This document shows, piece after piece, positions 7,447-62,626 of a DNA stretch of 64,000 nt (position 1 is its first letter; every line of letters starts with the position of its first letter). A program made the translations under genes and the position numbers. Under the pieces are notes generated by a model. That model saw nothing but the letters and a program-made list of their open reading frames with translations. It did not search any database and was not told where the DNA came from. Source of the DNA: Octopus sinensis (lineage: Eukaryota); contig NC_043004.1 of NCBI RefSeq assembly GCF_006345805.1, positions 6,262,001-6,326,000 on the forward strand, read 5' to 3'.

Positions 7447-7805
7447 GTAGGCATAGCTATATGGTTAACAAGCTTGCTTTGCAACCATGTGATTTTGGGT
7501 TCAGTCCCACTTCATAGTAACTTGGATAAGTGTTTTCTGTTATAGCTTTGGGCTGATTAATGTCTTGCAAGTAAATTTAGTAGATGGAAACTGTACAGAA
7601 GCCTGTCATGTGTGTGTGTGTCTTTATAGTTGTACCACTTGACAACCAGCATTGGTTTGTTAATGTCCTTGTAACTTAACAGTTCTGCAAGAAAAACCAA
7701 CAGAATAAGTACCAGGCATAAAATTGAGGTTGATTTGTTTGGGTAAAACCCTTCAAGGTGATGGCCCAGCTTGGTCACAGTCCAATGACTGGAACAAGTA
7801 AAAGG
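7447..7805 (+). mobile_element. SINE family A, diverged
   Basis: Colinear similarity to 385-760. Confidence 0.8.
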
Positions 7806-13987: not shown

Positions 13988-14170
13988 AGGCATATCTGTG
14001 TGGTTAAGAAGCTCACTTTGCAACCACACAGTTTCAGGTTCAGTCCCACTGCATGGCACTTAGGCCAGGTGTCTTCTACTATAACTTCTGGCCGACCAAA
14101 GCCTTCTGAGTGGATTTGGTAGACAGAAGTTGTGCGGAAACTTTCTTTCAGACTTATGTTTTTTACAGAT

Positions 14171-14223
<53 letters not shown>

Positions 14224-14436
14224 GTATGTGTGTGCCTGTGCTTGGCTTGTCCCCTATCACCATTTAACAACTGGTGTTTGTTTACGGCCCTCACTTAGTG
14301 GTTTGGCAAAAGAGGTCAGTAGAATAAGCACCAAATTTCAAGAAATAGGTTCTGGGGTCGATTTGTTTGATTAAATCTTTGAACACATTGCCATAGCATG
14401 GCCACAGTTCAACAATTGAAACAAGTAAAAGATTAA
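13988..14436 (+). mobile_element. SINE family A
   Basis: Colinear similarity with internal (TA)n(CA)n. Confidence 0.85.
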
Positions 14437-15789
14437 AAAATAAAGATAACAGAAATCTGTATTGAATTTATAGAAAATAACATTACTACAACTGCATGTG
14501 TGGGAATGGGGTGCTTGTGTGTGTGTGTTTTTAGAGATATTGTAACATAAATTGATTTATTTGAAGAATGGACTTATAAATGAAATGAAGTATTTCAAAA
14601 CGACCTCCTATCTTCAATGGAAGGAAAAAGAGAAAAAACCTCTTTGATAAAGGTCATACATCATCATAAATATAGAGGCTTTTGTGTGATCATTTACAAA
14701 AAAGCATGCATTTAGTCGGAATTAATTATTAATTATAAGTATTAAAAGTCATTAAATGTTCCGTATTTTTAGAAATACTGTCGATGAGTGAAAATAAAAT
14801 ATCATCTGTACTTCAAAGAGGCCAAACTCAAAATAGTTCAAGTTACTAACAAATCCAACAGTCCATAAACACAAAATGATAGACAAGAGATGACTGGATC
14901 ATGAATGCACATGGCCTAGTGGTTAGGGTTGTACTCGTGGTCATAAGATCATGGTTTCAATTCCCTGAAAGTAACTGGCCTTGTTCATAAATTAAGCTTC
15001 AGGTCAGCACCGATCAAATACACCTATGGTCCAAGTTATTTCAACAGCTGTTATCTCTCCCTTTCTTCAGGAATAGAGTATTTAGATGTGACGATGCATG
15101 CCCTGGTGATTAATAGCAACTCATGATTGCAAGATTGTAGCTTTGATTCCAAGACTAGGCAGGGTGTTGCATTATTACTCTAGTTCACTCAGCTGAAAAT
15201 AAGTTCCAGCTATAACCAGGAAGTTAACACTACAACAGACCAGTGTCCTGTTCAAGAAGAGTAAGTGTTATAATCTTAGTCACTTATGTACCATGGGAGC
15301 CAGGTTAAGGTCCAGTTTTATGTGTCCTAAGACTTGAGACAGTTTCAAGACTAAGTCAAAGATGACTGGACACAGCTGACAAAAACTAACCAAAAGAGCA
15401 ACAGTTCATAAAGTGCTGTCAGGCCAAGCATTGCGTTCTGTCTGTGACAAGGATTTTGAACACTAAACAGACCCAGTCAACCTAGTTGTAAACAAGAACC
15501 ACAAGGTAGGAACATCTTGGCACTTCAAATAGTTATAACTCTATAAAACTGACAAGAACATTCACAAATGGTAAGCCACTCCAATTGATACCACTTATAA
15601 CTGGGACATCCCTGATTGAGTAGACTTATAATTAAAGACATTCTAGCCATGACCACACATTTTCTCAACCAAAGTATTCTTTCTGATTATCTTATCCAAT
15701 GCGTTCCTCTTTTCACAAGTTAAGAGTAATCTGAGGGAGATTTGGTTGCTGTTTCTAGCAAATCAAGCAATCGTATAAAGCACTCTTAC

Positions 15790-23672: not shown

Positions 23673-24155
23673 GAACTATATGTGAATAAATTATGAGTTT
23701 GAAGAAATTGATTATTAAATATGGAAGCGGGCTTGAGAAAACAATTTTACTTTAACATCTATTTTTTTTTTTTTATTTCTACACTGCATTCGACAAGTTA
23801 AATGTAATTATATAAAAAACATATTAATCACTAAATATTTTATACTGCGTGCCATCATTGGTTTAACATTCATTTGTATTAGGTTGAAAAAGTTACATGT
23901 TGTATTTATTTATGTATATGTGGTACTTCATTTGTAGTATTTGATTTTTTAAGATCTAGTCCAGTGCTTCAGGATTGTAATGATGTGATTATTTATTTTT
24001 AGAATGACATTGTACGGAAGGTGTGAGAGACCGGATCTAGTCAGTTTGAGCATAAAACAAGTAGAATTTTGACTGTATTCTTTATTTTTTCCACTTGTGC
24101 CAGAGGCACTGTAAAATGTCATGATTGATGCCCTTCCTCCACAGACTAAAAGATA

Positions 24156-24546
24156 TACTCTTTACTCTTTTACTTGTTTCAGTCATTTGACTGTGGCCAT
24201 GCTGGAGTACTGCCTTTAGTCGAGCAAATCGACCCCAGCACTTATTCTTTGTAAGCCTAGTATTTATTCTATCAGTCACTTTTGCCAAACCGCTAGGTTA
24301 CGGTGATGTAAACACACCAGCATCGGTTGTCAAACGATGTTGGGGGGACAAACACAGACACAAAAACACACACACATATATACGACGGGCTTCTTTCAGT
24401 TTCCATCTACCAAATCCACTCACAAGGCTTTGATCGGCCTAAGGCTATAGTAGAAAGCACTTGCCCAAGGTGCCACACAGTGGGACCGAACCCGGAACCA
24501 TGTGGTTGGTAAGCAAGCTACTTACCACACAGCCACTTCTGCACCT
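24156..24546 (-). mobile_element. SINE family A, near full length
   Basis: Reverse-complement similarity including the TACTCTTT tail. Confidence 0.9.
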
Positions 24547-30275: not shown

Positions 30276-30553
30276 ACAGAGTATAATCAAGCTATTTTCG
30301 AAACAAGTTAACATGAAATTTCAATGGAAGTCAAAGTCTAGAAGTTACAGTATTATATTTAATCTTAATTACAGTTGTTTCAACACAAAGGGAAATACAC
30401 TTCATGAACATAAATAATCATCATCCTCATTATTATTGAACATCCATTTTCCATGCTGGCATGGGTTGGATGGTTTGACAGGAGCTGACACACCAAGCTC
30501 TACTGTCTGCTTTGGCATAGTTTCTACAGCTGGACGCTCTTCTTGATGCCAAT

Positions 30554-30838: not shown

Positions 30839-31120
30839 TCTTGATGCCAATATTCAAATATAAATGATTTTATAATATAATAATATGTGTGACATTGTTT
30901 ATTGAAAACTGAGTTAGCACAAGTTGCTAATTGTTTTTCATTGTGGTTACTTGTGTCTCCATTCTTTGAACGTGGAAACCAGGAATGAGAAACTCAAAAT
31001 AGCAACTCACAGAGTCAGCTCTGCCTAACAGTATTGAGTACTTTTTCTATTCAAATGCAATTCACACCAATGTGAAATCACCATGCATGAATGAATATGT
31101 ACACATGTGTAAAATATCTA

Positions 31121-32374
31121 CGAGGGATGTTCAGTAATGCCTCTGACCCACTTGTAGTTGTTTGATCTTGCTGAAATTTTGCATGTGCAATTATTTATAT
31201 CTTTATAGATTACGTGGCAAATTACAGCTCTGAACTAATTGTGGTTTCTGATTTACAGGTGTTTGAACTGAGTCAAGTGTGAAATGGAGCCTGTTGAGTG
31301 TCGAGCAGTGATCCGGGTTTTTGTATTTGAAAGGACGCACACCACGGGAGACTTTTGATGAAATGAAAGTAACTTATGGTGATGATGCCCCATCATATGA
31401 CCTTGTAAAACGCTGGCATCGTGAATTCAAACATGGTCGGAACTCTGTGGAAACAGCCCTCAGATCTGGTCACCCTCCTTCTGCCATTGATGAGGCATCT
31501 GTTCGTCAAGTTAAGGCTGCCATTTTGGAAGATCGACGCATAACTATTCGCCAAATAGCCCATGAGGTCAAGATTAGTACCGGGTCTGTGGAAACTATCA
31601 TTCATGACCATTTGCATATGCAAAAGGTGTCTGCCAGATGGATTCCGAGGTTGCTCACACCTTTCCAGAAGCAAGAACGCGTCTGGAGATGTGCCAAGAA
31701 GATGAGTCAAAATTTTTCAAAAGACTGATTACACAGGATGAAACCTGGGTCCATCACCATGATCCAGAGACCAAAGCCCAGTCAATGCAGTGGAAACACC
31801 GTGACTCACCTCCTCCAAAGAAGACAAGGGTGCAGCCCTCCGCTGGCAAGGTCATGCTCACAGTCTTCTGGGACCAGGACAGAATAGTGATGACAGATTT
31901 CCTGGCAAAGGGTACCACAATTACAGGAGCCTATTATGTTTCACTTTTGAGGAAATTAAGAGAAGCTATCAAAATCAAGAGGCGGGGCAAGATCAGCAAA
32001 GCATCCTCCTCCTGCAGGACAACTCGATGGTCGCCAGATCAGAAGCACAGGCGTGCGGCTATGAACTCCTCCCCCAACCCCCTACTCTCCTGACCTTGCA
32101 CCCTCGGATTTTCACCTCTTCCCAGCCATAAAGTTGTTTTTGAAAGGAAAGTGTTTCCCACATGATGCAGCCTTGATTTCCGAAGTCAGGTCGTGGTTGG
32201 AGGACCAAGCTGGGGTCTTCTACAAAAACGGTCTCTAGAGCTGCATCAAACGATGGAAGAAATGCGTAACTCTGGGTGGTTCCTATATAAAAGAAGACTA
32301 ATAACTGTGCCAAGTGTCGTTGCTCTACTGCTATGGAAAGTGGGTCAGGGGCATTACTTATTGAATGCCCCTCG
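31121..32374 (+). mobile_element. Near full-length mariner (Tc1/mariner) DNA transposon
   Basis: TIRs CGAGGGATGTTCA----GTAATGCCTCTGACCCA / TGGGTCAGGGGCATTACTTATTGAATGCCCCTCG; TA TSD at 31119-31120 and 32375-32376. Confidence 0.95.
31284..32301 (+). pseudogene. Mariner transposase pseudogene (multiple frameshifts and deletions)
   Basis: MEPVECRAVI start, HTH region, WIPRLL, ITQDETWVHH, LLQDN and YSPDLAPSDFHLF motifs spread over several frames. Confidence 0.92.
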
Positions 32375-33594
32375 TAATTACACTGTCTAACATGATTTTT
32401 GTCCTTGCGTAGCAACTGTTATTTCCTATTTGCTTACCCTTAGAAAGTATGAAAAATTGCTTTTTGTTAAATTTATTCAAACCCCAAAGAATCCCTCTCA
32501 ACACATAGCTATAATGCTCCTCCACCATTCCTGCTCATGAACAGAGATGCACATATTGTCAACCACCAAAAGTCATGCTCAAGTGCTTAAGGTCAACAAA
32601 TCTGTGGTATTGAATATTTGTAGAACATTTGCTATAATTATTTCTGTTTCAGCAACTCAGCACTGAATCTGTCTGAAATATAATGGAAAATAGGTCAGTT
32701 TCAAAACATTGATGTCCAGGTCACAGAAGCAAAGCTTGAAGGGAATGGTAGTCATTTCCTTTGATTTCTAGATAGAAGCAAATAGGAAATAACACTAACT
32801 GACCAAAGACAAAAAAATAAAAATTTTGTTACAGTATTATAGATTAAAAACAAAAGTATTCAGTCTGCTTTGAACCATTACAAAACAAAGAGGAGACACA
32901 TACACTTGCTATTAAATTAAAAAAAGGGATAATTTGATAGGAAATAAGTGTTTAGCTTCAGTATTTTATAATTTTACTTTTGCTCTTATGACAGTCTGAT
33001 ATTTGATTCCGTTCTCCGGAATCCTAAAGTACTTCCGGCAATACCATCCATTTTTTTTCATCTTACCAAACAACTTGACATTTTGCAACCAAAATTCAAC
33101 AGCTATCTGTACTCAAGGCTAACATGTGCCCTTAAATTTAAGAAAGAATTATCATCAATTATATCAGCCCTAGTAATTCACTGTACTTTATCAACCTTGG
33201 ATTATGCAGTCCACTGGGCTCAGTCCTTTATTTTCTAATCAATGATCTCATGCTTTATTATGCATGAAATCATTGATTCAGTAGTTATGATACAGTAATT
33301 TCCTGGAATGTGTGAGTGGAAGTGAAGGAATTGTATACTTTGTTGCATATTTTAATAAAAGTTTGTAGCTAATACTAAAATGACATGTTAAATAAAATTA
33401 AATTTAATTTCTTGCAGCAATGTTGGTAAGATGTCTTTAAATATGAGACAAAAAAAAATGTGAATTGACAAACACTAAGACATATTATTTTATAAAACGA
33501 AGATTTGCCTAACTTCTCTTACTTACAAAGTGGAATGCCTTACAACATACTTTCTGGTAAGATTTTCTTACTACATACCAAATTAACAATGCAT

Positions 33595-38609: not shown

Positions 38610-39005
38610 GGCCACAGAAGTGGCTGTGTGGTAAGAAGCTTGCTTCCCAACCACATGGTTCCGGGTTCAGTCTCACTGTGTGGCACCTAGGGCAAGTGTC
38701 TTCTACTATAGCTTCAAGCTGACCAAAGCCTCGGGAATGGATTTGGTAGACAGAAAACTGAAAGAAGCCCATCATATGTGTGTGTGTGTGTGTATGTTCG
38801 TGTGTCTGTGTTTGCCCCTCCCCCCCACCATCGCTTGACAACCGATGTTGGTGTGTTTACATCCCTGTAACTTAGCAGTTTGGCAAAAGAGACTAATAGA
38901 ATAAGTACTAGGCTTACAAAAAATGAGTTTTGGGGTTGATTTGTTTGGCTAAAGGCGGTGCTCCAGCATGGTCACAGTCAAATGACTGGAACAAGTAAAA
39001 AGAGT
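38610..39005 (+). mobile_element. SINE family A
   Basis: Full colinear similarity. Confidence 0.9.
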
Positions 39006-41950: not shown

Positions 41951-44199
41951 CCCGCATCTAGTGCAGCAATATCCCAGATGGCAGTACTTCTTTGATGAAA
42001 ATATAGATAGACAGTTATTAACAAAGTTGTACAAAGTAGGTAATAGACTCCAGAAAATCACTTGACTTGCTGGAAATTGCAGCCAACTCTCCACCGAATT
42101 ACACTTCCAGTGTTGACACATCAGATAATATAGTGTTGCATATTTCTAAAATGATAGGGTGGTCAGGACTAGAATAACCTTCACCAAATGTTACCAGAAC
42201 AGTGTTGACTATGCTAAGCAATAACAGCCAACTGTGTTTGGAAATTTATCAGTTGCTAATTTATAACAAATATCTGAAACTGTCATAACATCATAAAGAG
42301 AAGATAAGATAAAGTTCAGAACTGGACACCTATTGTAGTCTTTCAAAATCAAAACATCATCATTTAACGTCCATTTACCATGCTAGTATGGATCGGACAG
42401 CTTGATAGGATCCAACAAGCTGCAGGACTACATCAAGCTCCAGTGTCAGCTTCAGTATGGTTTCTATGTTTGAATGCCTTTCCTAATGCCAACCACCTTA
42501 AAGTGTGTACTGGGTGCCTTTTTCTTGATACCAGCACTACTGAGGTTGCCAAAATAAGGAATAGAAAATGGAAGAGTCCCGACTGAGTAGGGTGTGTACT
42601 TGAGGGAGTATGAAGATGGCTTTATGCAAGGTGATGAGAGGCTAAAGTATGACTGAGGAACAAGCATAGGTGTCTTACTATGGAGAAGATACATGGCTAC
42701 CCTATGTTATTTGCAGGTGAGTGAGAGTAGCTGAAAAGCAGAGATGATGGCAACAAGATGTTACAGCAAAACAAGGTACAAGAAGGTGAGTATAAGAGAG
42801 AATATGGACAATTGATCAGGGAATGAAGAGAGGGTAGTCTTTCACTTAGATTTTTACAGCTCACATACATTGGAGGCTTATAAGCAGATGTATGCATTTT
42901 GATATAAGTTTTAAGTGCATGGTGTATAAAGAAGAACATTTAATATTGTAATTTAAAGAATCTTATGATCTGTATGAGCGTAAAATAGTTTCATAAAGTA
43001 TATTTCAATGTACAGTGGAATGAGAATCCTAACATTTCAAACTGGACCCTTTTTCAGTTTTTTTTTTTTTCACAATACACTGACATTATCCACCCCTTCT
43101 TTTAAATGTTATATATATCATGTATATTAGATCCATGCATATATTTTAGTAATAGACTCCAGTAAAATTGTATGTTGAAAGCTGTTTTTTTTTTTGGTTT
43201 GTTTGAGGAAAGAAGGATATGTGATATTGCATAAACAAAGAATGTAAGAGATAAAATTTTGGCACTGTATACACCAACAAGTTAGTTTGGCACAAAAACC
43301 ATTGACTATTCTCACTGCTCTTCCATACTCTGCTACTAAACCACAAAGATGAGTAAAGATAAATGGTTTGGCCCTGACATGCTATAAAACCAGTGACAGT
43401 GTACCTACCAGCTTATGACTACCATTAAGAGACTACCACAATTCAAATGACATTAAAATTTCCTTCTAACATCACAAGGTCACTACAATTACCTTATGTT
43501 GTTAATATTTTCAATCCATTGAAAAAATGCACCCAGTATACACTTTAGGAAGGGCATCAAGCTGTAAAAACCATGCCAAACAGACACTGAATCACAATGC
43601 AGTCCTTGGGCCTTTGTCCAGCTCATGCTAGCATGGAATACAGATGTTAAATAATGATGATTGTTATACCAATATATATTTAGTAGGTTGTTCCCATAAA
43701 AAATACTAGATAAACTGTAACTTTCTAATTAATTATCAATAAGACAGCTAAAATATAATCAAAAGCAGGCATTCTCGAAAACTGAATAACAATAACTTCA
43801 ATATAATCAACAGAGTATTTATTTTTGGTGTGTGTTTAACAACAATCTTTCGTTTCCTTTTTTTTTTTCTCTTCAACTACTGACTCCATTCTGATAAATA
43901 AAACTCAGTTATCAATATTTTGCGTATACACTTTACAATACTATCGATGTTATACACTAAAGAGTGTCAACAAGTTACTTTGGAAAAAAAAATGGTTAAA
44001 CTCAAAATATTGGATTTTCACAAAAATAAAATTAAAATATTATTTCAACACACGGTTTCACATCAGGAAACTTGCAAAACAAATGTATCAATTCTATTCC
44101 ATTTATTTTTAACTTTATCAATTTCCTAAATATCCATGTACAAATTTCCTTTTTAAGTAAGAGGTAATTAATTAATAAAAAAAAATTTCTGAGAGTCAT

Positions 44200-46560
44200 T
44201 CAGAAGTGTATAAGTAACCGACTAATATATGATGTTTGGGAAAACATTTGATGAGTGAGTGATGACTCATACCCACACAGGCACGAAGACAAGGAGAAAC
44301 TGTATGGTGCCCTCAAAATTCTAGATAATAAAGTTGAAACAGAAAACAACTTTGATAAGAAAGTTGAGAAATTTAAAAGAGGCTATTATTGATACGAGTT
44401 ATATCGAAGGAACGCTGTAAAATTAATTGATTTTTGAATAGTGGTCACTGGCGTAGATTAACTCTATTAAGAAGGTTAAAAGCAAATATTTAGAGTAGAA
44501 AATTAATAGTTCTGTTATTAATTTGATTAAAAACGTGAAAAACTTTAAGTGATAGTAAACATCCAACGGAATCGTTAGATGAGTGGCATTTATTTGACTT
44601 TGGTGTTATCAAACAAACAAAATAATTGGGGTGGAGGAAAAATAACCTGGTAACTAATATCGTAAAACTTCTCAGCCTAAGAAAACCAACAAGAGAAGAC
44701 ATCAAAAACTTTTTCGATCGCTGAAGACAGTCTTCATCCAAGTGATATATGATCAAAGGCATTCCAGCCGAGACCATCCCACCATTTCTGTTCAGACAGT
44801 GTATACTAGGACACATTATCCAATGTATTCCTTTATTTTCATGGTATCATTTGACACCATAAAAATAAACAGGTCTATATAGAGGCCCCTATTTTCTATC
44901 TCAAAGCCTTTCCTCCCACGTCTAGCTTGGTGAATCGGTGTCAGTTATCTGCTTCAAAGATCTTTTATTCTAAAAGTGATAATATATGTGAGAAACGATC
45001 TTGCTTCCTCAATATAAATCTGGTTTTTCTTGCTACACACACAAGGATACATTGTTTAAACTAACTTTGTTTTACGGTGACACCGGTTTTAACATGTACA
45101 AATATTTTTATTAGCAATTATACAACCATTATATATATTAACAAAAAAATCTAACACATCCGAAATACAATAAGCAGTATTTTTAACCTTGACGAATGAT
45201 TTGTGAATGATGTGTATGTGTGAGTGAGAGAATGAAAGAGAGGAGTGCAGAGAAAGAAAGAGAGGGGTGCAGAGAGAGAAAGTGAGGGGTGTAGACAAAT
45301 AGGAAGACAGAGGGACAGAGAGAGGCGCACAGCGTGCATGTATATGAGAGAGGGAGTGGGAGAAAGAAACGATGTATAAATTTAGCAACTTTTTACGATA
45401 TAGTTTTGGGGTTTCTTTTTCGACTGTATGAAAAATATAAATATAATAATAGTATCTGGAATCTAAGATTCTCGAGAACGAAACAAAACAGAACTATAGT
45501 TAGAAGAAGATTAAACTTTCTACAACATAATTGTGTAATCAGAATAAACATATAAATATATCAAACAAAAATATCTAACCTGTAAGGAATGGTGGGTCGG
45601 TTCCAAACAGCAACAGTGAGACTTAGTTCTTTTAAAGACATCGGGACGTTTAGCTGGCCCCACTATGCCATGGTAATCCAGCTCAATCGTATAAGGATAA
45701 AACTATAGTTACAACTTATTGTTCCAGCGGGGGGAAATCATCGTTGGCAAGTAACAAAAGTAAAGAGTGAAAACTTTGAACGAAGTTTAAAAAAAAAAAA
45801 AAAGAGAGAAATCGGTTTCTAAAAACGAACTGAAAGTTTTTATAAGTTTATATCGCTTGACATGACTTCTAAACCACGCCAAACTTGCAGTGATGGTTAT
45901 GATGGTGAGAATGAAGGGGAAAAAGAGATGTAGGCGAAGTAGGAGTGTCGAGGAAATAGAAAGAGAGTAAGTGAATGAAGAGAGTGAAATATAGCCTCCC
46001 CTACAACCTCTACCGCCAAATTATCGCTTTACAGCCTCATGACGATAGTGGGTTATTAAAAGAGATTCTGAAACAGCTGGTGCGCGCGGCTAAATTAGAG
46101 TGCTTTCCCTTTCTAGAGAGAGAGCTAAATTTATATTTTACTCACTCTGGTTGTTGTCTATGTGCGGCAGTCAGTAAGGGGGGGAAAAAAAGACATAAAC
46201 AAGAGCCTCTTCTGTTTCCCCTAGATTCCCAGATCGTAATGAACGTTTGTGTAAACCAAAAAAGGTTCACATGCTGTGAGTCAGCGAAGAGAAAGCGAGA
46301 TTAAGCACACGCACCAGGAAAATAAAAAGAGAAAGAATATTTAAAGTTCTTCTTAATGCTCTTTGTAAGAGAAACTGCAGATGTTTCCAGTTAAAGCACC
46401 ATTGAAATTAATTATGTTGAAATTATTTAATTAGAGAAAAATAACATTTATACTATTAAATGAACCTGTTTATTATTACATTATATTAACAATGTGTTTT
46501 AAAGGAAGGTAGATTTACGCGTTGTGAGCGAAGGTGAGTTCTAACATTTTGGGTAGGGAT
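44200..46560. promoter_or_regulatory. CpG-retaining, largely SINE-free promoter-like region
   Basis: Frequent CG dinucleotides (e.g. TGCGCGCGGC at 46081, ACGCGT near 46517) against a CpG-poor background; GA-rich tract 45210-45370; AP-1 sites TGACTCA near 44263 and TGAGTCA near 46277. Confidence 0.5.
46146..46320 (-). other. Candidate first (5' UTR) exon of a minus-strand transcript
   Basis: Consensus donor AGA/GTGAGTAA (plus strand TTACTCAC at 46138-46145) inside the CpG-rich region; upstream boundary is a guess. Confidence 0.35.
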
Positions 46561-46644
46561 CTATTTAACCTTGAAACACACTTCTTCGAAGGGTTTGAAC
46601 CGAAACATAAGGACTCATCTGTCTTCACATCACACGAGTTTATA

Positions 46645-46773
46645 TGTCCCAAAAGTTCGTAAACACTTGCGAAAATTGAATTCTTACTCGCCAAGTACTA
46701 ACAAAAACAACAAAAATTATTCCTCAAAATAAAGACCATTATTTTCCAAGACTTTCTACGAACTTTTGGGACA
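46645..46773. mobile_element. Tc1/mariner-type MITE remnant
   Basis: Perfect 17-bp inverted repeat TGTCCCAAAAGTTCGTA / TACGAACTTTTGGGACA with TA-rich flanks. Confidence 0.7.
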
Positions 46774-46854
46774 ACCTTATATTATTTTGCAAATATAACA
46801 AGATTTACTACATTATGAAGGCAACAGGTACAGTGGATAATTTCCACTGTAAAT

Positions 46855-47042
46855 AATCCTTTCTATTATAGGCACGACGCCTGAAGTTTTAGTGTGTGTG
46901 TGTGGGGGGTTAATAGGTCATCATCGACACTGATAGATGAAAAGCAAAGTCAAACTCGGCGGTGTATGAACTCAGAACACAAAGACAGACAAAATGCCGC
47001 TAAGCGTCTCGCCCGGCGCGCTAACGCCAGCTCGCCGCCTTG
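46855..47042 (-). mobile_element. SINE family B copy retaining CpGs
   Basis: GCCGCTAAGCGTCTCGCCCGGCGCGCTAACGCCAGCTCGCCGCCTT. Confidence 0.85.
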
Positions 47043-47069
47043 CCGAGAGTAATGAAAATAGTGATTGAA

Positions 47070-47260
47070 GTGCAGATATGCTTATGTGGTTAAGAAGCTC
47101 GCTTTGCATCCACATGGTTTTGAGTTCAGTCCCACTGCACTGCACTTCGGGCAAGTGTTTCTTACTCTTGGCCCGAACCGACCAATGCCTTGTGAGTGGT
47201 GAAATTTGGTAGCTAGAAACTGTGCGGAAACCCGTCGTGTGTATGTGTGTACGTATATGT
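47070..47260 (+). mobile_element. SINE family A, 5' half
   Basis: Colinear similarity. Confidence 0.8.
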
Positions 47261-47299
47261 GTATGGGTACTATATTTTATTGGAGAGATATCCCAATTT

Positions 47300-47728
47300 G
47301 GCATAGTTTCGGTTGTAGTAGCACAGATTTCCGTCGATTTCCGTAAAAAACTTTTATTTTTTTACATAAGTAATGAGAGCGAAAGAGACTAAGAGGAAGC
47401 GATTTTACGACGAGAAGGTTTCACTTTGAAATCGGCTGTGTGCGTTTGATGGGGTGTGGGAGACAGACAGTATGTTGTGTAAGTGAAGTGCTTCTGTTAG
47501 TGTGTGCGAAGAGACAGAGAGAGTAATGTGTGAAAGAGAGAGATAACTGATTTTTTTACTCGGTGTATGTGTATATGTATGTATGCATGTATGTGTGTGT
47601 GTGTGTATGTATCTATGTATGTGTGTGTGTTTATGTATGTATGTATGTATGTATGGCCGATTCATCGTATTTTTTACTCGGTGTATGTGAATATGTATGT
47701 CTGCATGTATGTGTGTGTGTGTAAGTAC

Positions 47729-47760
<32 letters not shown>

Positions 47761-48589
47761 ATGTATGGCCGATTCAGTGTTTACATTATTTCGAATTAAA
47801 ACGAAAGATTACCTTGCGGCGCCTGTTTATGTAACAGTCTGCTATGTAGAAAATAATGAGGTTGACTCAATGGAATAATGACAGTGATCGAAGATATAGA
47901 CAAAATTTTTTTTATTTAATCGTTATACATGCCTTGTCGACTGCTACTGTGCAGCCTTAATGTCTCTGTTGATGTGACGATGGTGAAATGGTAAGAAACA
48001 GATGGGAGAGTTATAAAATGAGGAGATATTCTTCTCATGAGAAAAGAGTTGCATTCAAAGGAAAAAAAAGTTAATAGTCTATAGAGGTGCACAGAAACTG
48101 GGTGCAAGCATGCATATATATGCATGTGTAAACATTGTGTTGTGCAGCAAAAGGAACGAACAGTACAAAATGTGTAAGGAAAAGTGACAAATCCGATTGG
48201 TAATGTTCTGTGTGAAAAGTCTATGCCGGCCATACATACATACATACATACATAAACACACACACATACATAGATACATACACACACACACACACATACA
48301 TGCATACATACATATACACATACACCGAGTAAAAAAATCAGTTATCTCTCTCTTTCACACATTACTCTCTCTGTCTCTTCGCACACACTAACAGAAGCAC
48401 TTCACTTACACAACATACTGTCTGTCTCCCACACCCCATCAAACGCACACAGGCCGACTTCAAAGTGAAACCTTCTCGTCGTAAAATCGCTTCCTCTTAG
48501 TCTCTTTCGCTCTCATTACTTATGTAAAAAAATAAAAGTTTTTTACGGAAATCGACGGAAATCTGATCTACGACATACGAAACTTCGCC
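47300..48589. mobile_element. Non-autonomous long-TIR DNA transposon (Merlin- or Mutator/Foldback-like)
   Basis: Inverted arms 47300-47659 and 48227-48589; GGC...GCC termini; perfect 8-bp TSD CCCAATTT at 47292-47299 and 48590-48597. Confidence 0.85.
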
Positions 48590-50611
48590 CCCAATTTTTT
48601 AATGGTAATTTTTTAAAAATAGGGGTGAGATAACCAAAAAGAACCAGAACGGTACCTCTGTATGTATGTATTCCCCCTCTCCCACCCATCTACCGCTTCA
48701 TAACCGGTGTTGCTTTGTTTCCATCGTCTTTGTTTACCAGTTCCTCGAAAAGAGAGCCGATAAAATAAGTACCAGGCTTAAAAAATAATTGCTGAGCTAA
48801 ATTTGTTTCTAAACTCTTGAAAGACAATGCCTTATCATGGCTACAGTCCAATGACTGAAACAAGTAAAAGATGAAAGATGTATTTCAGACATTAAGTTAC
48901 TGGAAATGTTTTAAGTAAGACAGACGTGGTATCAGTTATTCTTTTTTTACGATGTTATGTAAAGGTGATTTCAGTAAATATTTAGACCTTGTGAAGTTTA
49001 GTGAGTGGCAGCAACAGCTGAGGACAGAAGCTTCGTGCAATAGAGGAATTTCTAAGAATTTCTACAGGATCAACTAACAAGGAAGCCTACAAATGGATGC
49101 TTGATTTGCTAGAATGAATAGTTCTATCTCTGATGTAATTACTGATAGAGTATACAATTAGATACGAGGTTAAATAGATAGAATTTTGGGGGTGGCTTTT
49201 TTGTGTGTGTTCATCATCATCAGTTAATGTCCATTTTTCCATGCTGGCGTGGCCTGGATGGGTCAAGAGGAACCAATGAGGTAGAGGGTTGTGCTCAGCT
49301 CCAATGTTTTTGGCATAGTCTCTATGACTGGATGCCCTTTCTAATGCCAAACACTTCACAGTTTACTGTGTGCTTTTCTACAAGACACTTTTTTCAAGTA
49401 CTAGTGAGGTCACCAGGTCCTCACAAAAAGAAACACTAAACTGCGAGGGGTATAGCACTGAAGGGTGTGGGAATATGATAGAGGGCACAGGAGCAAGTGT
49501 CATGCTGAGGTGGTAAATACATAACTTCCTGAGAGAAAGAGAGACAAACAGACAGATGGTGAGGGTATACTCTTAAGGTACAAGATGAATATGAGTGAAA
49601 GGATAGGGATGAAGGAGTACAAAAGGTGGGTGTGTAGGAAGTATGCATGAGGAGGCAACATTAACTGGTGAGAAAGTGTGAAGTCAAGTTTTCAGCAAAC
49701 TTGTGTGTGTGAGAGAGAGAGAGAGAGGGGAGTAGGGAGGGAGACAGAAGCTAATATAAACATTGTACTTCAAATGAAGTACAATGGTGAAAATGTGCTG
49801 TCAATTGATGGTAGAAGATACTACCAGAAGAGGTTGGTTAAATAAAACTGGGAAAGAATTAGTGAGGTGAGATCTGAGAATGCTAGATCTGAAATATGAG
49901 ATCATCATTTAACATTCGTTTTCCAAGCTGGCATGGGTTGGAAGGCTGCACTAGGCTCCAGTCGTCTGTTTTGACAGATGATAAAATCAAAACAAATAAG
50001 AAATTACTATATAGCAGAACCATCTAACTGATACTAAAACAATGAATATGCATACACATGCACAGAGAGCAAGTCAACCATATCGTCATGTCTGGATAGT
50101 TTGTCACACCTAACTGGTTCACATAAAGAAAAAAGAAAAACAAAAAACATATAGCCTACCTAAGTAACAATTATAATCACTAAATTATTTCTGGTTTTTC
50201 AGTGTACCAAGTAATAATGGTCTATTTATCTGTGTGACAAATTGTTTCTCTATCTGCATATATCAAAAGCAAAATTCAAGTTTCTGTCATGGCATATATT
50301 CGTAGTTCTTTGAAATGATAATCCAATTTGATGCTCTGTACCTATTTTAGTCACTGCATTATTTTTAGATGTTTGCTGCCAGCAATTTAGATCAGACTTT
50401 TGCAAAGATGTCATTGTAGCTCAGATAGCTGATTGATTATATTCGGCACCTTCATATTCTGTGAAGAAACTGATAAATCGCTGAGTTAGACAATTAGTTG
50501 TTGTTGTTTAACACTAGGCCAACTGTTACCTAATAAATCTATAATCAACTTCTTTGCTCTTCTCAGAGGAGTGTAGAACGACATTATCTAATGGATCTTT
50601 TTTCTTTTTAA

Positions 50612-55050: not shown

Positions 55051-55450
55051 GTGAAGTGGCTGTGTGGTAAGTAGCTTGCTTACAAACCACATGGTTCCGG
55101 GTTCAGCCCCACTGTGTGGCACCTTGGGCAATTGTCTTCCTTCTACTATAGCCTCGGGCCAACCAAAGCCTCGTGAGTGGATTTGGTAGATGGAAACTGA
55201 AAGAAGCCCGTTATATATATGTATATATATATATGTATGTGTGTGTGTATATGTTTGTGTGTCTGTGTTTGTCCCCCCCCTCCTCAACATCTCTTGACAA
55301 CCGATGGCGGTGTGTTTACGTCGCTGTAACTTAGTGGTTCGGCAAAAGAGGTCAATAGAATAAGTCCTGGGGTCAATTTGCTCGACTAAAGGTGGTGCTC
55401 CAGCATGGCCACAGTCAAATGACTAAAACAAGTAAAAGAGTAAGAGTAAA
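55051..55450 (+). mobile_element. SINE family A
   Basis: Full colinear similarity. Confidence 0.9.
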
Positions 55451-61867: not shown

Positions 61868-62626
61868 CAGCGTTTCTCAACCTTTTCACCCTTAAATAAA
61901 TTCCATGTCTCAAGGAACCCCTGCACAAAAAAATATACCATATCTATCTCATATCTATTTCATAATAGTTCATGTGGTAAATATCACATATATATATATA
62001 ATCTTTTGTGGTGAATGGCGATTTGACGTCTATATCTAGCATGTTGACTGTCCACTTTTCGTGTTCAGTCCTTAATTGGTATATATATATATATATATAT
62101 ATATGGTTGTTATATCTTTAATAACATAAGGTTAGATAAGATGATGTCTACATTACAATAACCAATAATATGTTGTGCATGTATAGTAATATCACAATCA
62201 TGAAATTACGGAGATGTACTTGCATAGCAAGTAACCTGATCTGAGATTGTGTACTGGAATGAAAACAATTGCAGCGTTGAAGGTGTTTATAAGCCATTTA
62301 AGACACACACAAAAACCATTAGATTCACGTCAACATTTAAATTTAATTTGCCAAAATATTTTCATAGCTTTGAGACTGTGACCTGTTCACTGACAAAATT
62401 CCGTGCTGCACAGAATTTTGGCAAATTAAATTTAAATCTAAATATTTTGGCAAATTAAATTTAAATGTTGAAATGAATCTAATGCTTTTTGTGTGTTTCT
62501 TAAATGGCATATAATCACCTTCCACAATCATGAAATTAATATCAGCTTATCTCACTGTCTAGCAGAACCCCTAGGAACCTTTTGCGGAAACCTGGGGTTC
62601 CAGGAAACACCGGTTGAGAAACACTG
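61868..62626. mobile_element. hAT (Charlie-like) MITE with nested insertions
   Basis: TIRs CAGCGTTTCTCAACC / GGTTGAGAAACACTG; perfect 8-bp TSD CATTAGTC at 61860-61867 and 62627-62634. Confidence 0.9.
62209..62522. mobile_element. Retro-type insertion with an internal inverted duplication (Penelope-like?)
   Basis: 16-bp TSD CACAATCATGAAATTA at 62193-62208 and 62523-62538; inverted arms of about 85 bp at 62280-62362 and 62440-62522. Confidence 0.6.

What the first reader, a model, noticed from the sequence alone, without database searches (positions are those of the whole stretch)
47300..48589. 1.29-kb foldback-type DNA transposon with about 360-bp TIRs and a perfect 8-bp TSD
The arms (360 and 363 bp) occupy over half the element, end in GGC/GCC, and are flanked by CCCAATTT on both sides. 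GG termini, long TIRs and an 8-bp TSD fit Merlin (IS1016-related) or Mutator/Foldback elements. I do not recognise it as a described octopus family. It encodes no transposase and sits directly beside the promoter-like region. If transcribed it would form a roughly 340-bp near-perfect duplex, a strong ADAR or Dicer substrate.
Basis: partly seen in the sequence, partly recalled or inferred. Interest (0 to 1): 0.7.

Follow-up and report, generated by a model that had tools for sequence, protein, structure and literature searches.

The report
Non-coding long-inverted-repeat DNA transposon copy
This is a real 1.29-kb insertion with 360-bp inverted ends and an 8-bp target duplication, best read as an ordinary non-coding "cut-and-paste" transposon copy sitting inside an older SINE; its transposase family and copy number could not be tested.

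Summary
Arms 47300-47659 and 48227-48589 are 97.5% complementary over 358 nt. They are abutted by a perfect 8-bp direct repeat, CCCAATTT (chance about 8e-5). The element encodes nothing recognisable.

What I added:
- It is nested in an old SINE copy, inside about 95 bp of extra non-SINE DNA.
- It lies within, not merely beside, a CpG-undepleted domain at about 44-49 kb.
- Seven of the nine differences between the arms fall in the outermost 24 nt, while the interior is nearly perfect.
- Each end carries GATTTCCGT twice.
- The left arm has an extra diverged copy of the inner 112-bp microsatellite unit.

Best reading: a non-autonomous class II TIR element with foldback-like architecture, moved in trans by a DDE transposase that makes 8-bp staggered cuts. 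The long arms are probably secondary to a shorter, asymmetric TIR of about 45 bp.

GG termini, the 8-bp TSD and the long TIRs fit Merlin and Mutator/Phantom about equally. The hAT and P terminal signatures are not met.

No second copy lies in the 64-kb window, and no collection I could reach returned DNA of the host genome. Ordinary kind, low interest.

The parts
47292..47299 (.). Left copy of the 8-bp target-site duplication, CCCAATTT
   Evidence: Chance about 7.8e-5.
47300..47659 (+). Left arm (360 nt), starting 5'-GGCATAG and ending ...ATGGCCG
   Evidence: 97.5% complementary to the right arm.
47300..47323 (+). Left tip. These outer 24 nt differ from the right tip at 7 of 24 positions.
   Evidence: The clustering of differences has binomial P about 2e-7.
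47326..47344 (+). Subterminal direct repeat, 2 x GATTTCCGT. Candidate transposase-binding motif (inferred).
   Evidence: 4 of the 5 occurrences in the window lie in the two arms, against 0.18 expected.
47552..47664 (+). Inner unit, copy 1: TTTTTTACTCGG(TGTA/TG)nTGGCCGATTCA. It forms the inner end of the left arm.
47670..47776 (+). Inner unit, copy 2. It is about 88-90% identical to copy 1 and has no counterpart on the right side.
47777..48226 (.). Unique, non-coding middle domain
   Evidence: No Pfam hit, no protein relative and no similarity elsewhere in the window.
48227..48589 (-). Right arm (363 nt), the reverse complement of the left arm. A GCCGGC palindrome lies at its inner junction (48225-48230).
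48545..48563 (-). Subterminal 2 x GATTTCCGT of the right end
48566..48589 (-). Right tip (5'-GGCGAAG... when read inward), diverged from the left tip
48590..48597 (.). Right copy of the 8-bp target-site duplication, CCCAATTT
47267..47299 (.). Left part of a stretch of about 95 bp of AT-rich non-SINE DNA that contains the insertion site
   Evidence: Absent from 11 other SINE copies. No other copy in the window.
48598..48659 (.). Right part of the same non-SINE stretch. GGTAC lies at both outer edges (47266-47270 and 48654-48658).
47085..47266 (+). 5' half of the host SINE copy
   Evidence: about 20 related copies in the window.
48660..48880 (+). 3' half of the host SINE copy

Best explanation
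The segment is one copy of a non-autonomous cut-and-paste (class II, TIR-order) DNA transposon with foldback-like architecture.

How it got there (inferred from the anatomy): a DDE transposase supplied in trans made an 8-bp staggered cut at CCCAATTT and joined the element's GG-ended termini to it. Gap repair then produced the 8-bp duplication. The target lay in an AT-rich stretch inside an old SINE copy, within a CpG-undepleted and presumably unmethylated, open domain.

What the transposase probably recognises (inferred): the outer 45 bp or so, meaning an asymmetric GG-tip of 24 nt followed by two GATTTCCGT motifs. The near-perfect 335-bp interior of the arms is probably secondary. One possibility is an inverted duplication or template switch seeded at the shared core CAGATTTCCGTCGATTTCCGT. 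The other is arm-to-arm gene conversion that spares the tips.

Which transposase (undecided): most likely Merlin (IS1595-like) or Mutator/Phantom, which fit about equally well.

Shown: inverted arms, TSD, absence of coding capacity, nesting in a SINE. Inferred: mobility in trans, the binding motifs, the origin of the arms, the superfamily.
For: - Arms are 97.5% complementary over 358 nt.
- An exact 8-bp direct repeat abuts both termini, with empirical chance 7.8e-5.
- No ORF has a Pfam hit or any relative.
- The element interrupts a SINE that has about 20 uninterrupted relatives in the window.
- GATTTCCGT occurs twice in each end, 4 of the 5 window occurrences against 0.18 expected.
- Seven of nine arm differences lie in the outer 24 nt, P about 2e-7, and six of those seven are transversions.
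- The structure is asymmetric: the inner unit is duplicated only on the left and the middle domain is unique. That argues against a simple palindromic artefact.
- Literature: Merlin has 5'-GG termini, TIRs of 24-462 bp and TSDs of 8-9 bp; imperfect tips are known; Octopus bimaculoides has 191 Merlin hits (PMC8101967).
- Literature: MULEs have TSDs of 8-11 bp and TIRs up to hundreds of bp, including Spectre with an 8-bp TSD (PMC6446971).
- Literature: foldback-like Tm1 has asymmetric terminal motifs (PMC3169594), and Tetris has TSDs of 8-10 bp (PMC4079207).
- Literature: many recently active TIR and MITE families are reported in Octopus vulgaris (PMC13282606).
Against: - No second copy of the arms, tips or centre was found in the 64-kb window.
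- None was found in any collection I could reach. Those collections appear to lack the host genome, so this is absence of test rather than evidence of absence.
- Comparison with the other SINE copies does not give a clean empty site, because about 95 bp of additional non-SINE DNA surround the element.
- The tips, normally the most constrained part of a TIR, are the least similar part here.
- The superfamily rests on three generic features only.
Confidence: 0.7

Rival explanations
1. A one-off local rearrangement. A fold-back or template-switch inverted duplication arose at this locus and was never mobile. The 8-bp flanking repeat would then be coincidence or a by-product of break repair.
For: No other copy was seen anywhere I could look. 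The near-perfect interior with diverged tips, and a GCCGGC palindrome at the inner junction of the right arm, are what a template switch could leave.
Against: An exact 8-bp direct repeat precisely at both outer ends has a chance of about 8e-5. The tips are still homologous (17 of 24) and start with the same GGC. The whole unit is foreign to the SINE it interrupts. A local duplication would need a nearby source for the arm sequence, and none exists in the window.
Confidence: 0.1
2. An assembly artefact, for example a chimeric or palindromic long read, or a mis-joined repeat.
For: Long near-perfect inverted repeats containing microsatellites are prone to assembly error. No read data were available to me.
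Against: A missed-adapter palindrome would be symmetric about a point. Here there is a 567-nt asymmetric interval between the arms, with a unique 450-bp middle. The inner unit is duplicated on one side only. There are arm-specific substitutions and indels, and a matching TSD set in a continuous SINE context.
Confidence: 0.05
3. A non-autonomous element of another 8-bp-TSD superfamily: hAT, P/Galileo-like, Zisupton or Novosib.
For: The 8-bp TSD is the hallmark of hAT. hAT families are among the most numerous recently active TIR families in Octopus vulgaris (PMC13282606). Galileo shows that foldback architecture can arise in the P superfamily (PMC3688188, PMC4079207).
Against: The termini GGCAT and GGCGA do not match the hAT 5'-YARNG or the P/Galileo 5'-CA signatures, which I take from my own knowledge of those families. 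No alternative boundary gives a TSD (by inspection). Long TIRs are atypical for hAT.
Confidence: 0.1
4. A hairpin-RNA gene, such as an endo-siRNA, long-hairpin or editing-substrate locus, rather than or in addition to a transposon.
For: The predicted perfect-stem RNA has an MFE of -773 kcal/mol. The locus lies in a CpG-undepleted, promoter-like domain.
Against: There is no evidence of transcription. Rfam gave only sub-threshold microsatellite matches to mir-297. The TSD and the terminal anatomy are explained by transposition and not by a gene model.
Confidence: 0.05

Closest known systems
Non-autonomous Merlin elements (IS1595/IS1016-related superfamily)
   Same: 5'-GG termini, an 8-bp TSD, a TIR length within the reported 24-462 bp, and tolerance of imperfect tips (PMC8101967). 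The superfamily is reported as unusually abundant in Octopus bimaculoides in the same paper.
   Different: No link to a DDE_Tnp_IS1595 transposase was shown. Only 2 recently active Merlin families are reported in O. vulgaris (PMC13282606).
Mutator/Phantom foldback-like elements (Drosophila FB, Tm1 of Meloidogyne, Tetris of D. virilis, Spectre)
   Same: Long TIRs that occupy most of the element, a non-coding middle domain, asymmetric outermost motifs (Tm1 A1/A2), and internal repeats in the arms. TSDs of 8-10 bp are reported for Tm1 and Tetris, and 8 bp for Spectre (PMC3169594, PMC4079207, PMC6446971).
   Different: The usual MULE/FB TSD is 9 bp. Here the arms are mostly unique sequence, and only the inner 110 nt or so is a repeat unit (2 copies left, 1 right). 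No MULE transposase partner is known.
Galileo (P superfamily, foldback-like)
   Same: It shows that long, internally repetitive TIRs can evolve secondarily from a short-TIR transposon, and that the long TIRs carry repeated transposase-binding sites (PMC3688188, PMC3573991).
   Different: By my own knowledge, Galileo has a 7-bp TSD and CA-type termini. Neither is seen here.

Membership tests
Class II TIR-order non-autonomous element (MITE-like or foldback-like) | Terminal inverted repeats at both ends | tested here: met
   Arms of 360 and 363 nt, 97.5% complementary.
Class II TIR-order non-autonomous element (MITE-like or foldback-like) | Target-site duplication of fixed length directly outside the TIRs | tested here: met
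   CCCAATTT on both sides, exactly 8 bp, chance about 7.8e-5.
Class II TIR-order non-autonomous element (MITE-like or foldback-like) | No transposase gene | tested here: met
   No Pfam hit and no relatives for any ORF.
Class II TIR-order non-autonomous element (MITE-like or foldback-like) | Several dispersed copies that share the termini and have different TSDs | tested here: inconclusive
   None in the 64-kb window. Pattern scans of the metagenome, prokaryote-genome and viral collections found nothing. No search returned DNA that matched the window beyond its mariner element.
Class II TIR-order non-autonomous element (MITE-like or foldback-like) | An empty site exists (orthologous or paralogous) | tested here: inconclusive
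   Eleven other SINE copies lack the element, but they also lack the surrounding 95 bp.
Merlin | Conserved terminal 5'-GG | tested here: met
   GGCATAG and GGCGAAG. Criterion from PMC8101967.
Merlin | TSD of 8 or 9 bp | tested here: met
   8 bp.
Merlin | TIR of 24-462 bp | tested here: met
   360 bp.
Merlin | Mobilised by a DDE_Tnp_IS1595 transposase carried by an autonomous element with the same TIRs | not testable with these tools
   No host genome or TE library was available.
Mutator/MULE, including Phantom/Foldback | TSD of 8-11 bp, mostly 9 | tested here: met
   8 bp, the lower edge of the range (PMC6446971, PMC3169594).
Mutator/MULE, including Phantom/Foldback | Long TIRs (tens to hundreds of bp) | tested here: met
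   360 bp.
Mutator/MULE, including Phantom/Foldback | An autonomous partner that encodes a MULE-domain transposase | not testable with these tools
   No host genome was available.
Foldback (structural class) | Arms built largely of tandem subrepeats around a short non-coding middle domain | tested here: inconclusive
   The middle domain is non-coding. Only the inner 110 nt or so of the arm is a repeat unit, with 2 copies on the left and 1 on the right. The outer 250 nt is unique sequence.
hAT | 8-bp TSD | tested here: met
hAT | Short TIRs with a terminal 5'-YARNG | tested here: not met
   The termini are GGCAT and GGCGA, and no alternative boundary keeps a TSD. The criterion comes from my own knowledge of the family.
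P / Galileo | TSD of 7-8 bp with CA-type termini | tested here: not met
   The TSD length fits, but the termini start with GG. The criterion comes from my own knowledge.

The most novel reading that the evidence does not exclude
The copy is a snapshot of how a foldback element is born. In this reading a short-TIR transposon with asymmetric ends of about 45 bp acquired 335-bp perfect arms in one step, by an inverted duplication seeded at its 21-bp shared TIR core, and then transposed. It landed in an unmethylated promoter-like domain. Read-through transcription there would yield a dsRNA of about 355 bp, feeding ADAR editing or RNAi in a cephalopod.
Probability: 0.1. Interest if true: 0.5.

Novelty: new member of a known kind. 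Interest (0 to 1): 0.22.

Why it matters
In itself it matters little. Non-autonomous TIR elements are common, and many recently active TIR, MITE and unclassified families are already reported in octopus (PMC13282606).

Three things would make it modestly useful if confirmed genome-wide:
- A young long-TIR family would be a marker of recent DNA-transposon activity.
- The contrast between diverged tips and a perfect interior could show how long foldback arms arise from short TIRs.
- A perfect inverted repeat of about 355 bp inside a CpG-undepleted domain is a candidate source of dsRNA and a potential hotspot for rearrangement.

Tried and rejected
**Other copies in the window**
- BLASTN of the whole element, the unique arm parts and the centre (word sizes 9 and 7) found only microsatellite matches and two non-significant A/G-rich hits.
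- The tip pattern GGCRWAGTTTCG with one mismatch gave one chance hit at 30514.
- A home-made scan for TIRs with 8- or 9-bp TSDs found only TA-microsatellite artefacts. It cannot detect imperfect tips such as these.

**Copies elsewhere**
- Exact-pattern scans with two arm segments found nothing in the metagenome collection (2 scans), the prokaryote-genome collection (1) or the viral collection (1).
- The centre ORF searched against 5.8 billion proteins found nothing.
- The arm ORF searched against 1.84 billion representatives gave one low-complexity hit.
- Exact look-ups of two window ORFs found nothing on record.

**Attempts to reach host-genome DNA**
- The mariner ORF gave hits. The two long contigs fetched share only the mariner with the window and carry no SINE, so they are other organisms. 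A third hit was a 929-bp Logan contig, which I did not compare further.
- A SINE-derived ORF gave one weak hit.
- The host organism therefore stays unverified by tools. The SINE families look like octopus repeats to me from memory only.

**RNA families and coding checks**
- Rfam gave only sub-threshold mir-297 matches caused by the TG/TA microsatellite. No tRNA genes were found.
- Pfam on the element's ORFs found nothing.

**Ideas rejected**
- CTATGCC at 48221-48227 is the reverse complement of the left tip and sits at the inner edge of the right arm. I considered whether it marks the true right end of a 927-bp element. I rejected this because there is no extended similarity (shuffle p 0.1-0.4) and GGCATAG occurs 9 times in the window.
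- CpG retention as a sign of the element's youth. I rejected this because the old host SINE and the whole 44-49 kb domain also keep their CpGs.

Full report
**1. Observation**

The sequence is as described.
- The segment 47300-48589 is 1290 bp.
- Its first 360 nt and last 363 nt are reverse complements at 97.5% over 358 aligned positions, with BLAST E about 2e-173. The arms are 56% of the element.
- The ends read 5'-GGC...GCC-3'.
- CCCAATTT sits immediately outside both ends, at 47292-47299 and 48590-48597. The neighbouring bases differ on both sides, so the direct repeat is exactly 8 bp and no other boundary choice gives a repeat.
- In two million random boundary pairs drawn from this window, an 8-bp flank identity occurred at a frequency of 7.8e-5.
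- Folded as RNA, the element is predicted to form one stem of about 355 bp with a few bulges, MFE -773 kcal/mol.

**2.

- *Uneven arm similarity.* Seven of the nine differences between the arms lie in the outermost 24 nt. Compare GGCATAGTTTCGGTTGTAGTAGCA with GGCGAAGTTTCGTATGTCGTAGAT: six of the seven are transversions. Positions 25-360 carry one substitution and two small indels. Such clustering has a binomial P of about 2e-7.
- *Subterminal motif.* Directly inside each tip is GATTTCCGTCGATTTCCGT, two copies of GATTTCCGT. Four of the five occurrences of this 9-mer in the window are in the two arms, against 0.18 expected.
- *Inner unit.* The inner 110 nt or so of each arm is TTTTTTACTCGG(TGTA/TG)nTGGCCG. 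On the left it is followed by a second copy, about 88-90% identical (47670-47776), which has no partner on the right.
- *Middle domain.* The 450-bp centre (47777-48226) is unique and non-coding. The longest ORF (129 aa) begins in the microsatellite. It has no Pfam hit and no relative among 5.8 billion proteins. The longest open arm segment has no relative among 1.84 billion representatives.

**3. Surroundings**

- *Host SINE.* The flanks are the two halves of a SINE copy of about 380 bp, at 47085-47266 and 48660-48880. About 20 relatives lie in the window, each with a central TG/TA microsatellite.
- *Extra non-SINE DNA.* An alignment with 11 other copies shows that the foreign DNA in this copy is not just the element. 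About 95 bp of AT-rich non-SINE sequence is also present (47267-47299 plus 48598-48659). It is bounded by GGTAC on both sides and has no other copy in the window.
- *Likely order of events.* SINE first, then a short insertion of unknown nature, then the element into that insertion. The other SINE copies therefore show that the region is an insertion but do not give a clean empty site.
- *CpG domain.* The whole stretch from about 44 to 49 kb has a CpG observed/expected ratio of 0.7-1.1, against 0.32 for the window. The host SINE copy keeps its CpGs (0.69, against 0.0-0.55 in ten other copies). Its own high CpG content (0.93) cannot be read as a sign of youth.
- *No gene evidence.* I saw no convincing coding exon within 3 kb or so on either side. 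There are no tRNA genes and no Rfam families above threshold.

**4. What it most likely is**

Inverted termini, an exact fixed-length target duplication, no coding capacity and nesting in an older repeat together make up the anatomy of a non-autonomous cut-and-paste DNA transposon. I hold that reading at about 0.7.

The mechanism follows from what is established for DDE transposases and is inferred, not shown:
1. The enzyme is supplied in trans and binds the ends.
2. It excises the element.
3. It joins the 3' ends to a target cut with an 8-bp stagger.
4. Repair of the gaps gives CCCAATTT on both sides.

The diverged tips with a perfect interior suggest that the functional TIR is the outer 45 bp or so, meaning an asymmetric tip plus the repeated GATTTCCGT motif. 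The long arms would then be secondary. They could come from an inverted duplication or template switch seeded at the shared 21-bp core. A GCCGGC palindrome lies at the inner junction of the right arm (48225-48230). Alternatively, arm-to-arm conversion may stop short of the tips.

Asymmetric outer motifs are documented in the foldback-like Tm1 family (PMC3169594), and strongly imperfect tips in a Merlin family (PMC8101967). Secondary elongation of TIRs has been proposed for foldback-like elements (PMC4079207, citing Marzo et al. 2008). Without other copies I cannot say which process applies, or whether the long arms are a trait of the family or of this copy.

**5. Superfamily**

- *Merlin.* Defined by 5'-GG termini, TSDs of 8-9 bp and TIRs of 24-462 bp (PMC8101967). 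All three are met. O. bimaculoides is reported there as unusually rich in Merlin sequences (191).
- *MULEs.* They have TSDs of 8-11 bp and TIRs up to hundreds of bp. Invertebrate lineages with 8-bp TSDs (Spectre) and 8-10 bp TSDs (Phantom, Tm1, Tetris) are known (PMC6446971, PMC3169594, PMC4079207). These features are also met, at the low edge of the TSD range. Mutator families outnumber Merlin families among recently active O. vulgaris elements, 21 against 2 (PMC13282606).
- *hAT and P/Galileo.* hAT shares the 8-bp TSD, but its 5'-YARNG terminus is not met. P/Galileo CA-type termini are not met either. Both criteria come from my own knowledge.
- *Weighing.* I rate Merlin and Mutator/Phantom about equal and the others together at about 0.1.
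- *'Foldback'.* This is a structural label that spans superfamilies (PMC3169594, PMC4079207). It fits only loosely here, because most of each arm is unique sequence.

**6. What could not be tested**

They are other copies with the same termini, an empty site, an autonomous partner and long-read support.
- The window holds no second copy.
- Exact-pattern scans of the metagenome, prokaryote-genome and viral collections were empty.
- The protein collections returned nothing that could be traced to this genome. Centre, arm and SINE ORFs found nothing, and exact look-ups failed.
- The mariner hits I followed to long contigs come from unrelated organisms, which share only the mariner at about 88% DNA identity.
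- The nulls are therefore uninformative about copy number.
- The host species is not verified by any tool. The SINEs look like octopus repeats to me from memory only.

**7. Rivals**

- *One-off fold-back rearrangement (0.1).* It would explain the lack of other copies and the perfect interior. It does not explain an exact 8-bp repeat at both outer ends, or why the whole unit is foreign to the SINE.
- *Assembly artefact (0.05).* This is unlikely given the asymmetric interior and the arm-specific differences, but it needs reads to exclude.
- *Another 8-bp-TSD superfamily (0.1).*
- *Hairpin-RNA gene (0.05).* There is no evidence of transcription. This reading is compatible with the transposon origin rather than an alternative to it.

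**8. Verdict**

- It is a member of a known kind in a genome already reported to hold many such families (PMC13282606).
- Interest is low, about 0.2. The one detail worth a follow-up is the contrast between diverged tips and a perfect interior, as a possible record of how long foldback arms arise.

Noticed in passing
window 47267-47299 and 48598-48659: About 95 bp of AT-rich non-SINE DNA surround the element inside the host SINE. GGTAC bounds the stretch on both sides, and its minus strand ends AATAAAATATA. It may be a short older insertion, perhaps a truncated retro-copy with a 5-bp TSD. There is no other copy in the window.
   Followed up: partly
window about 44000-49000: A CpG-undepleted domain, with observed/expected 0.7-1.1 against 0.32 for the whole window, and positive GC skew. 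It is presumably a germline-unmethylated, promoter-like region. No exon or transcription start was identified.
   Followed up: partly
window 31119-32376: A frameshifted Mos1/mariner-like transposase pseudogene (HTH_48 plus Transposase_1). Its DNA is about 88% identical to contigs of two unrelated ENA assemblies that share nothing else with the window. Named protein hits are crustacean. This suggests a horizontally spread mariner lineage.
   Followed up: partly
window 62276-62525: A 250-bp inverted repeat with 86-nt arms (92% complementary) and a 78-nt loop. It could be a MITE or a hairpin. TSD not examined.
   Followed up: no
window-wide, e.g. 7458-7804, 13999-14437, 24152-24544, 38627-39000, 55063-55439: About 20 copies of one SINE of about 380 bp with a central TG/TA microsatellite, in both orientations. 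Pairs of these copies account for most of the other long inverted repeats in the window.
   Followed up: partly
window 46850-47060 (minus strand); 49200-49430 and 49900-49980: Two further short interspersed repeat types flank the locus. One is CpG-rich and lies just left of the host SINE. The other is a 'catcatcat...ttttccatgctgg' repeat that occurs twice to the right.
   Followed up: no
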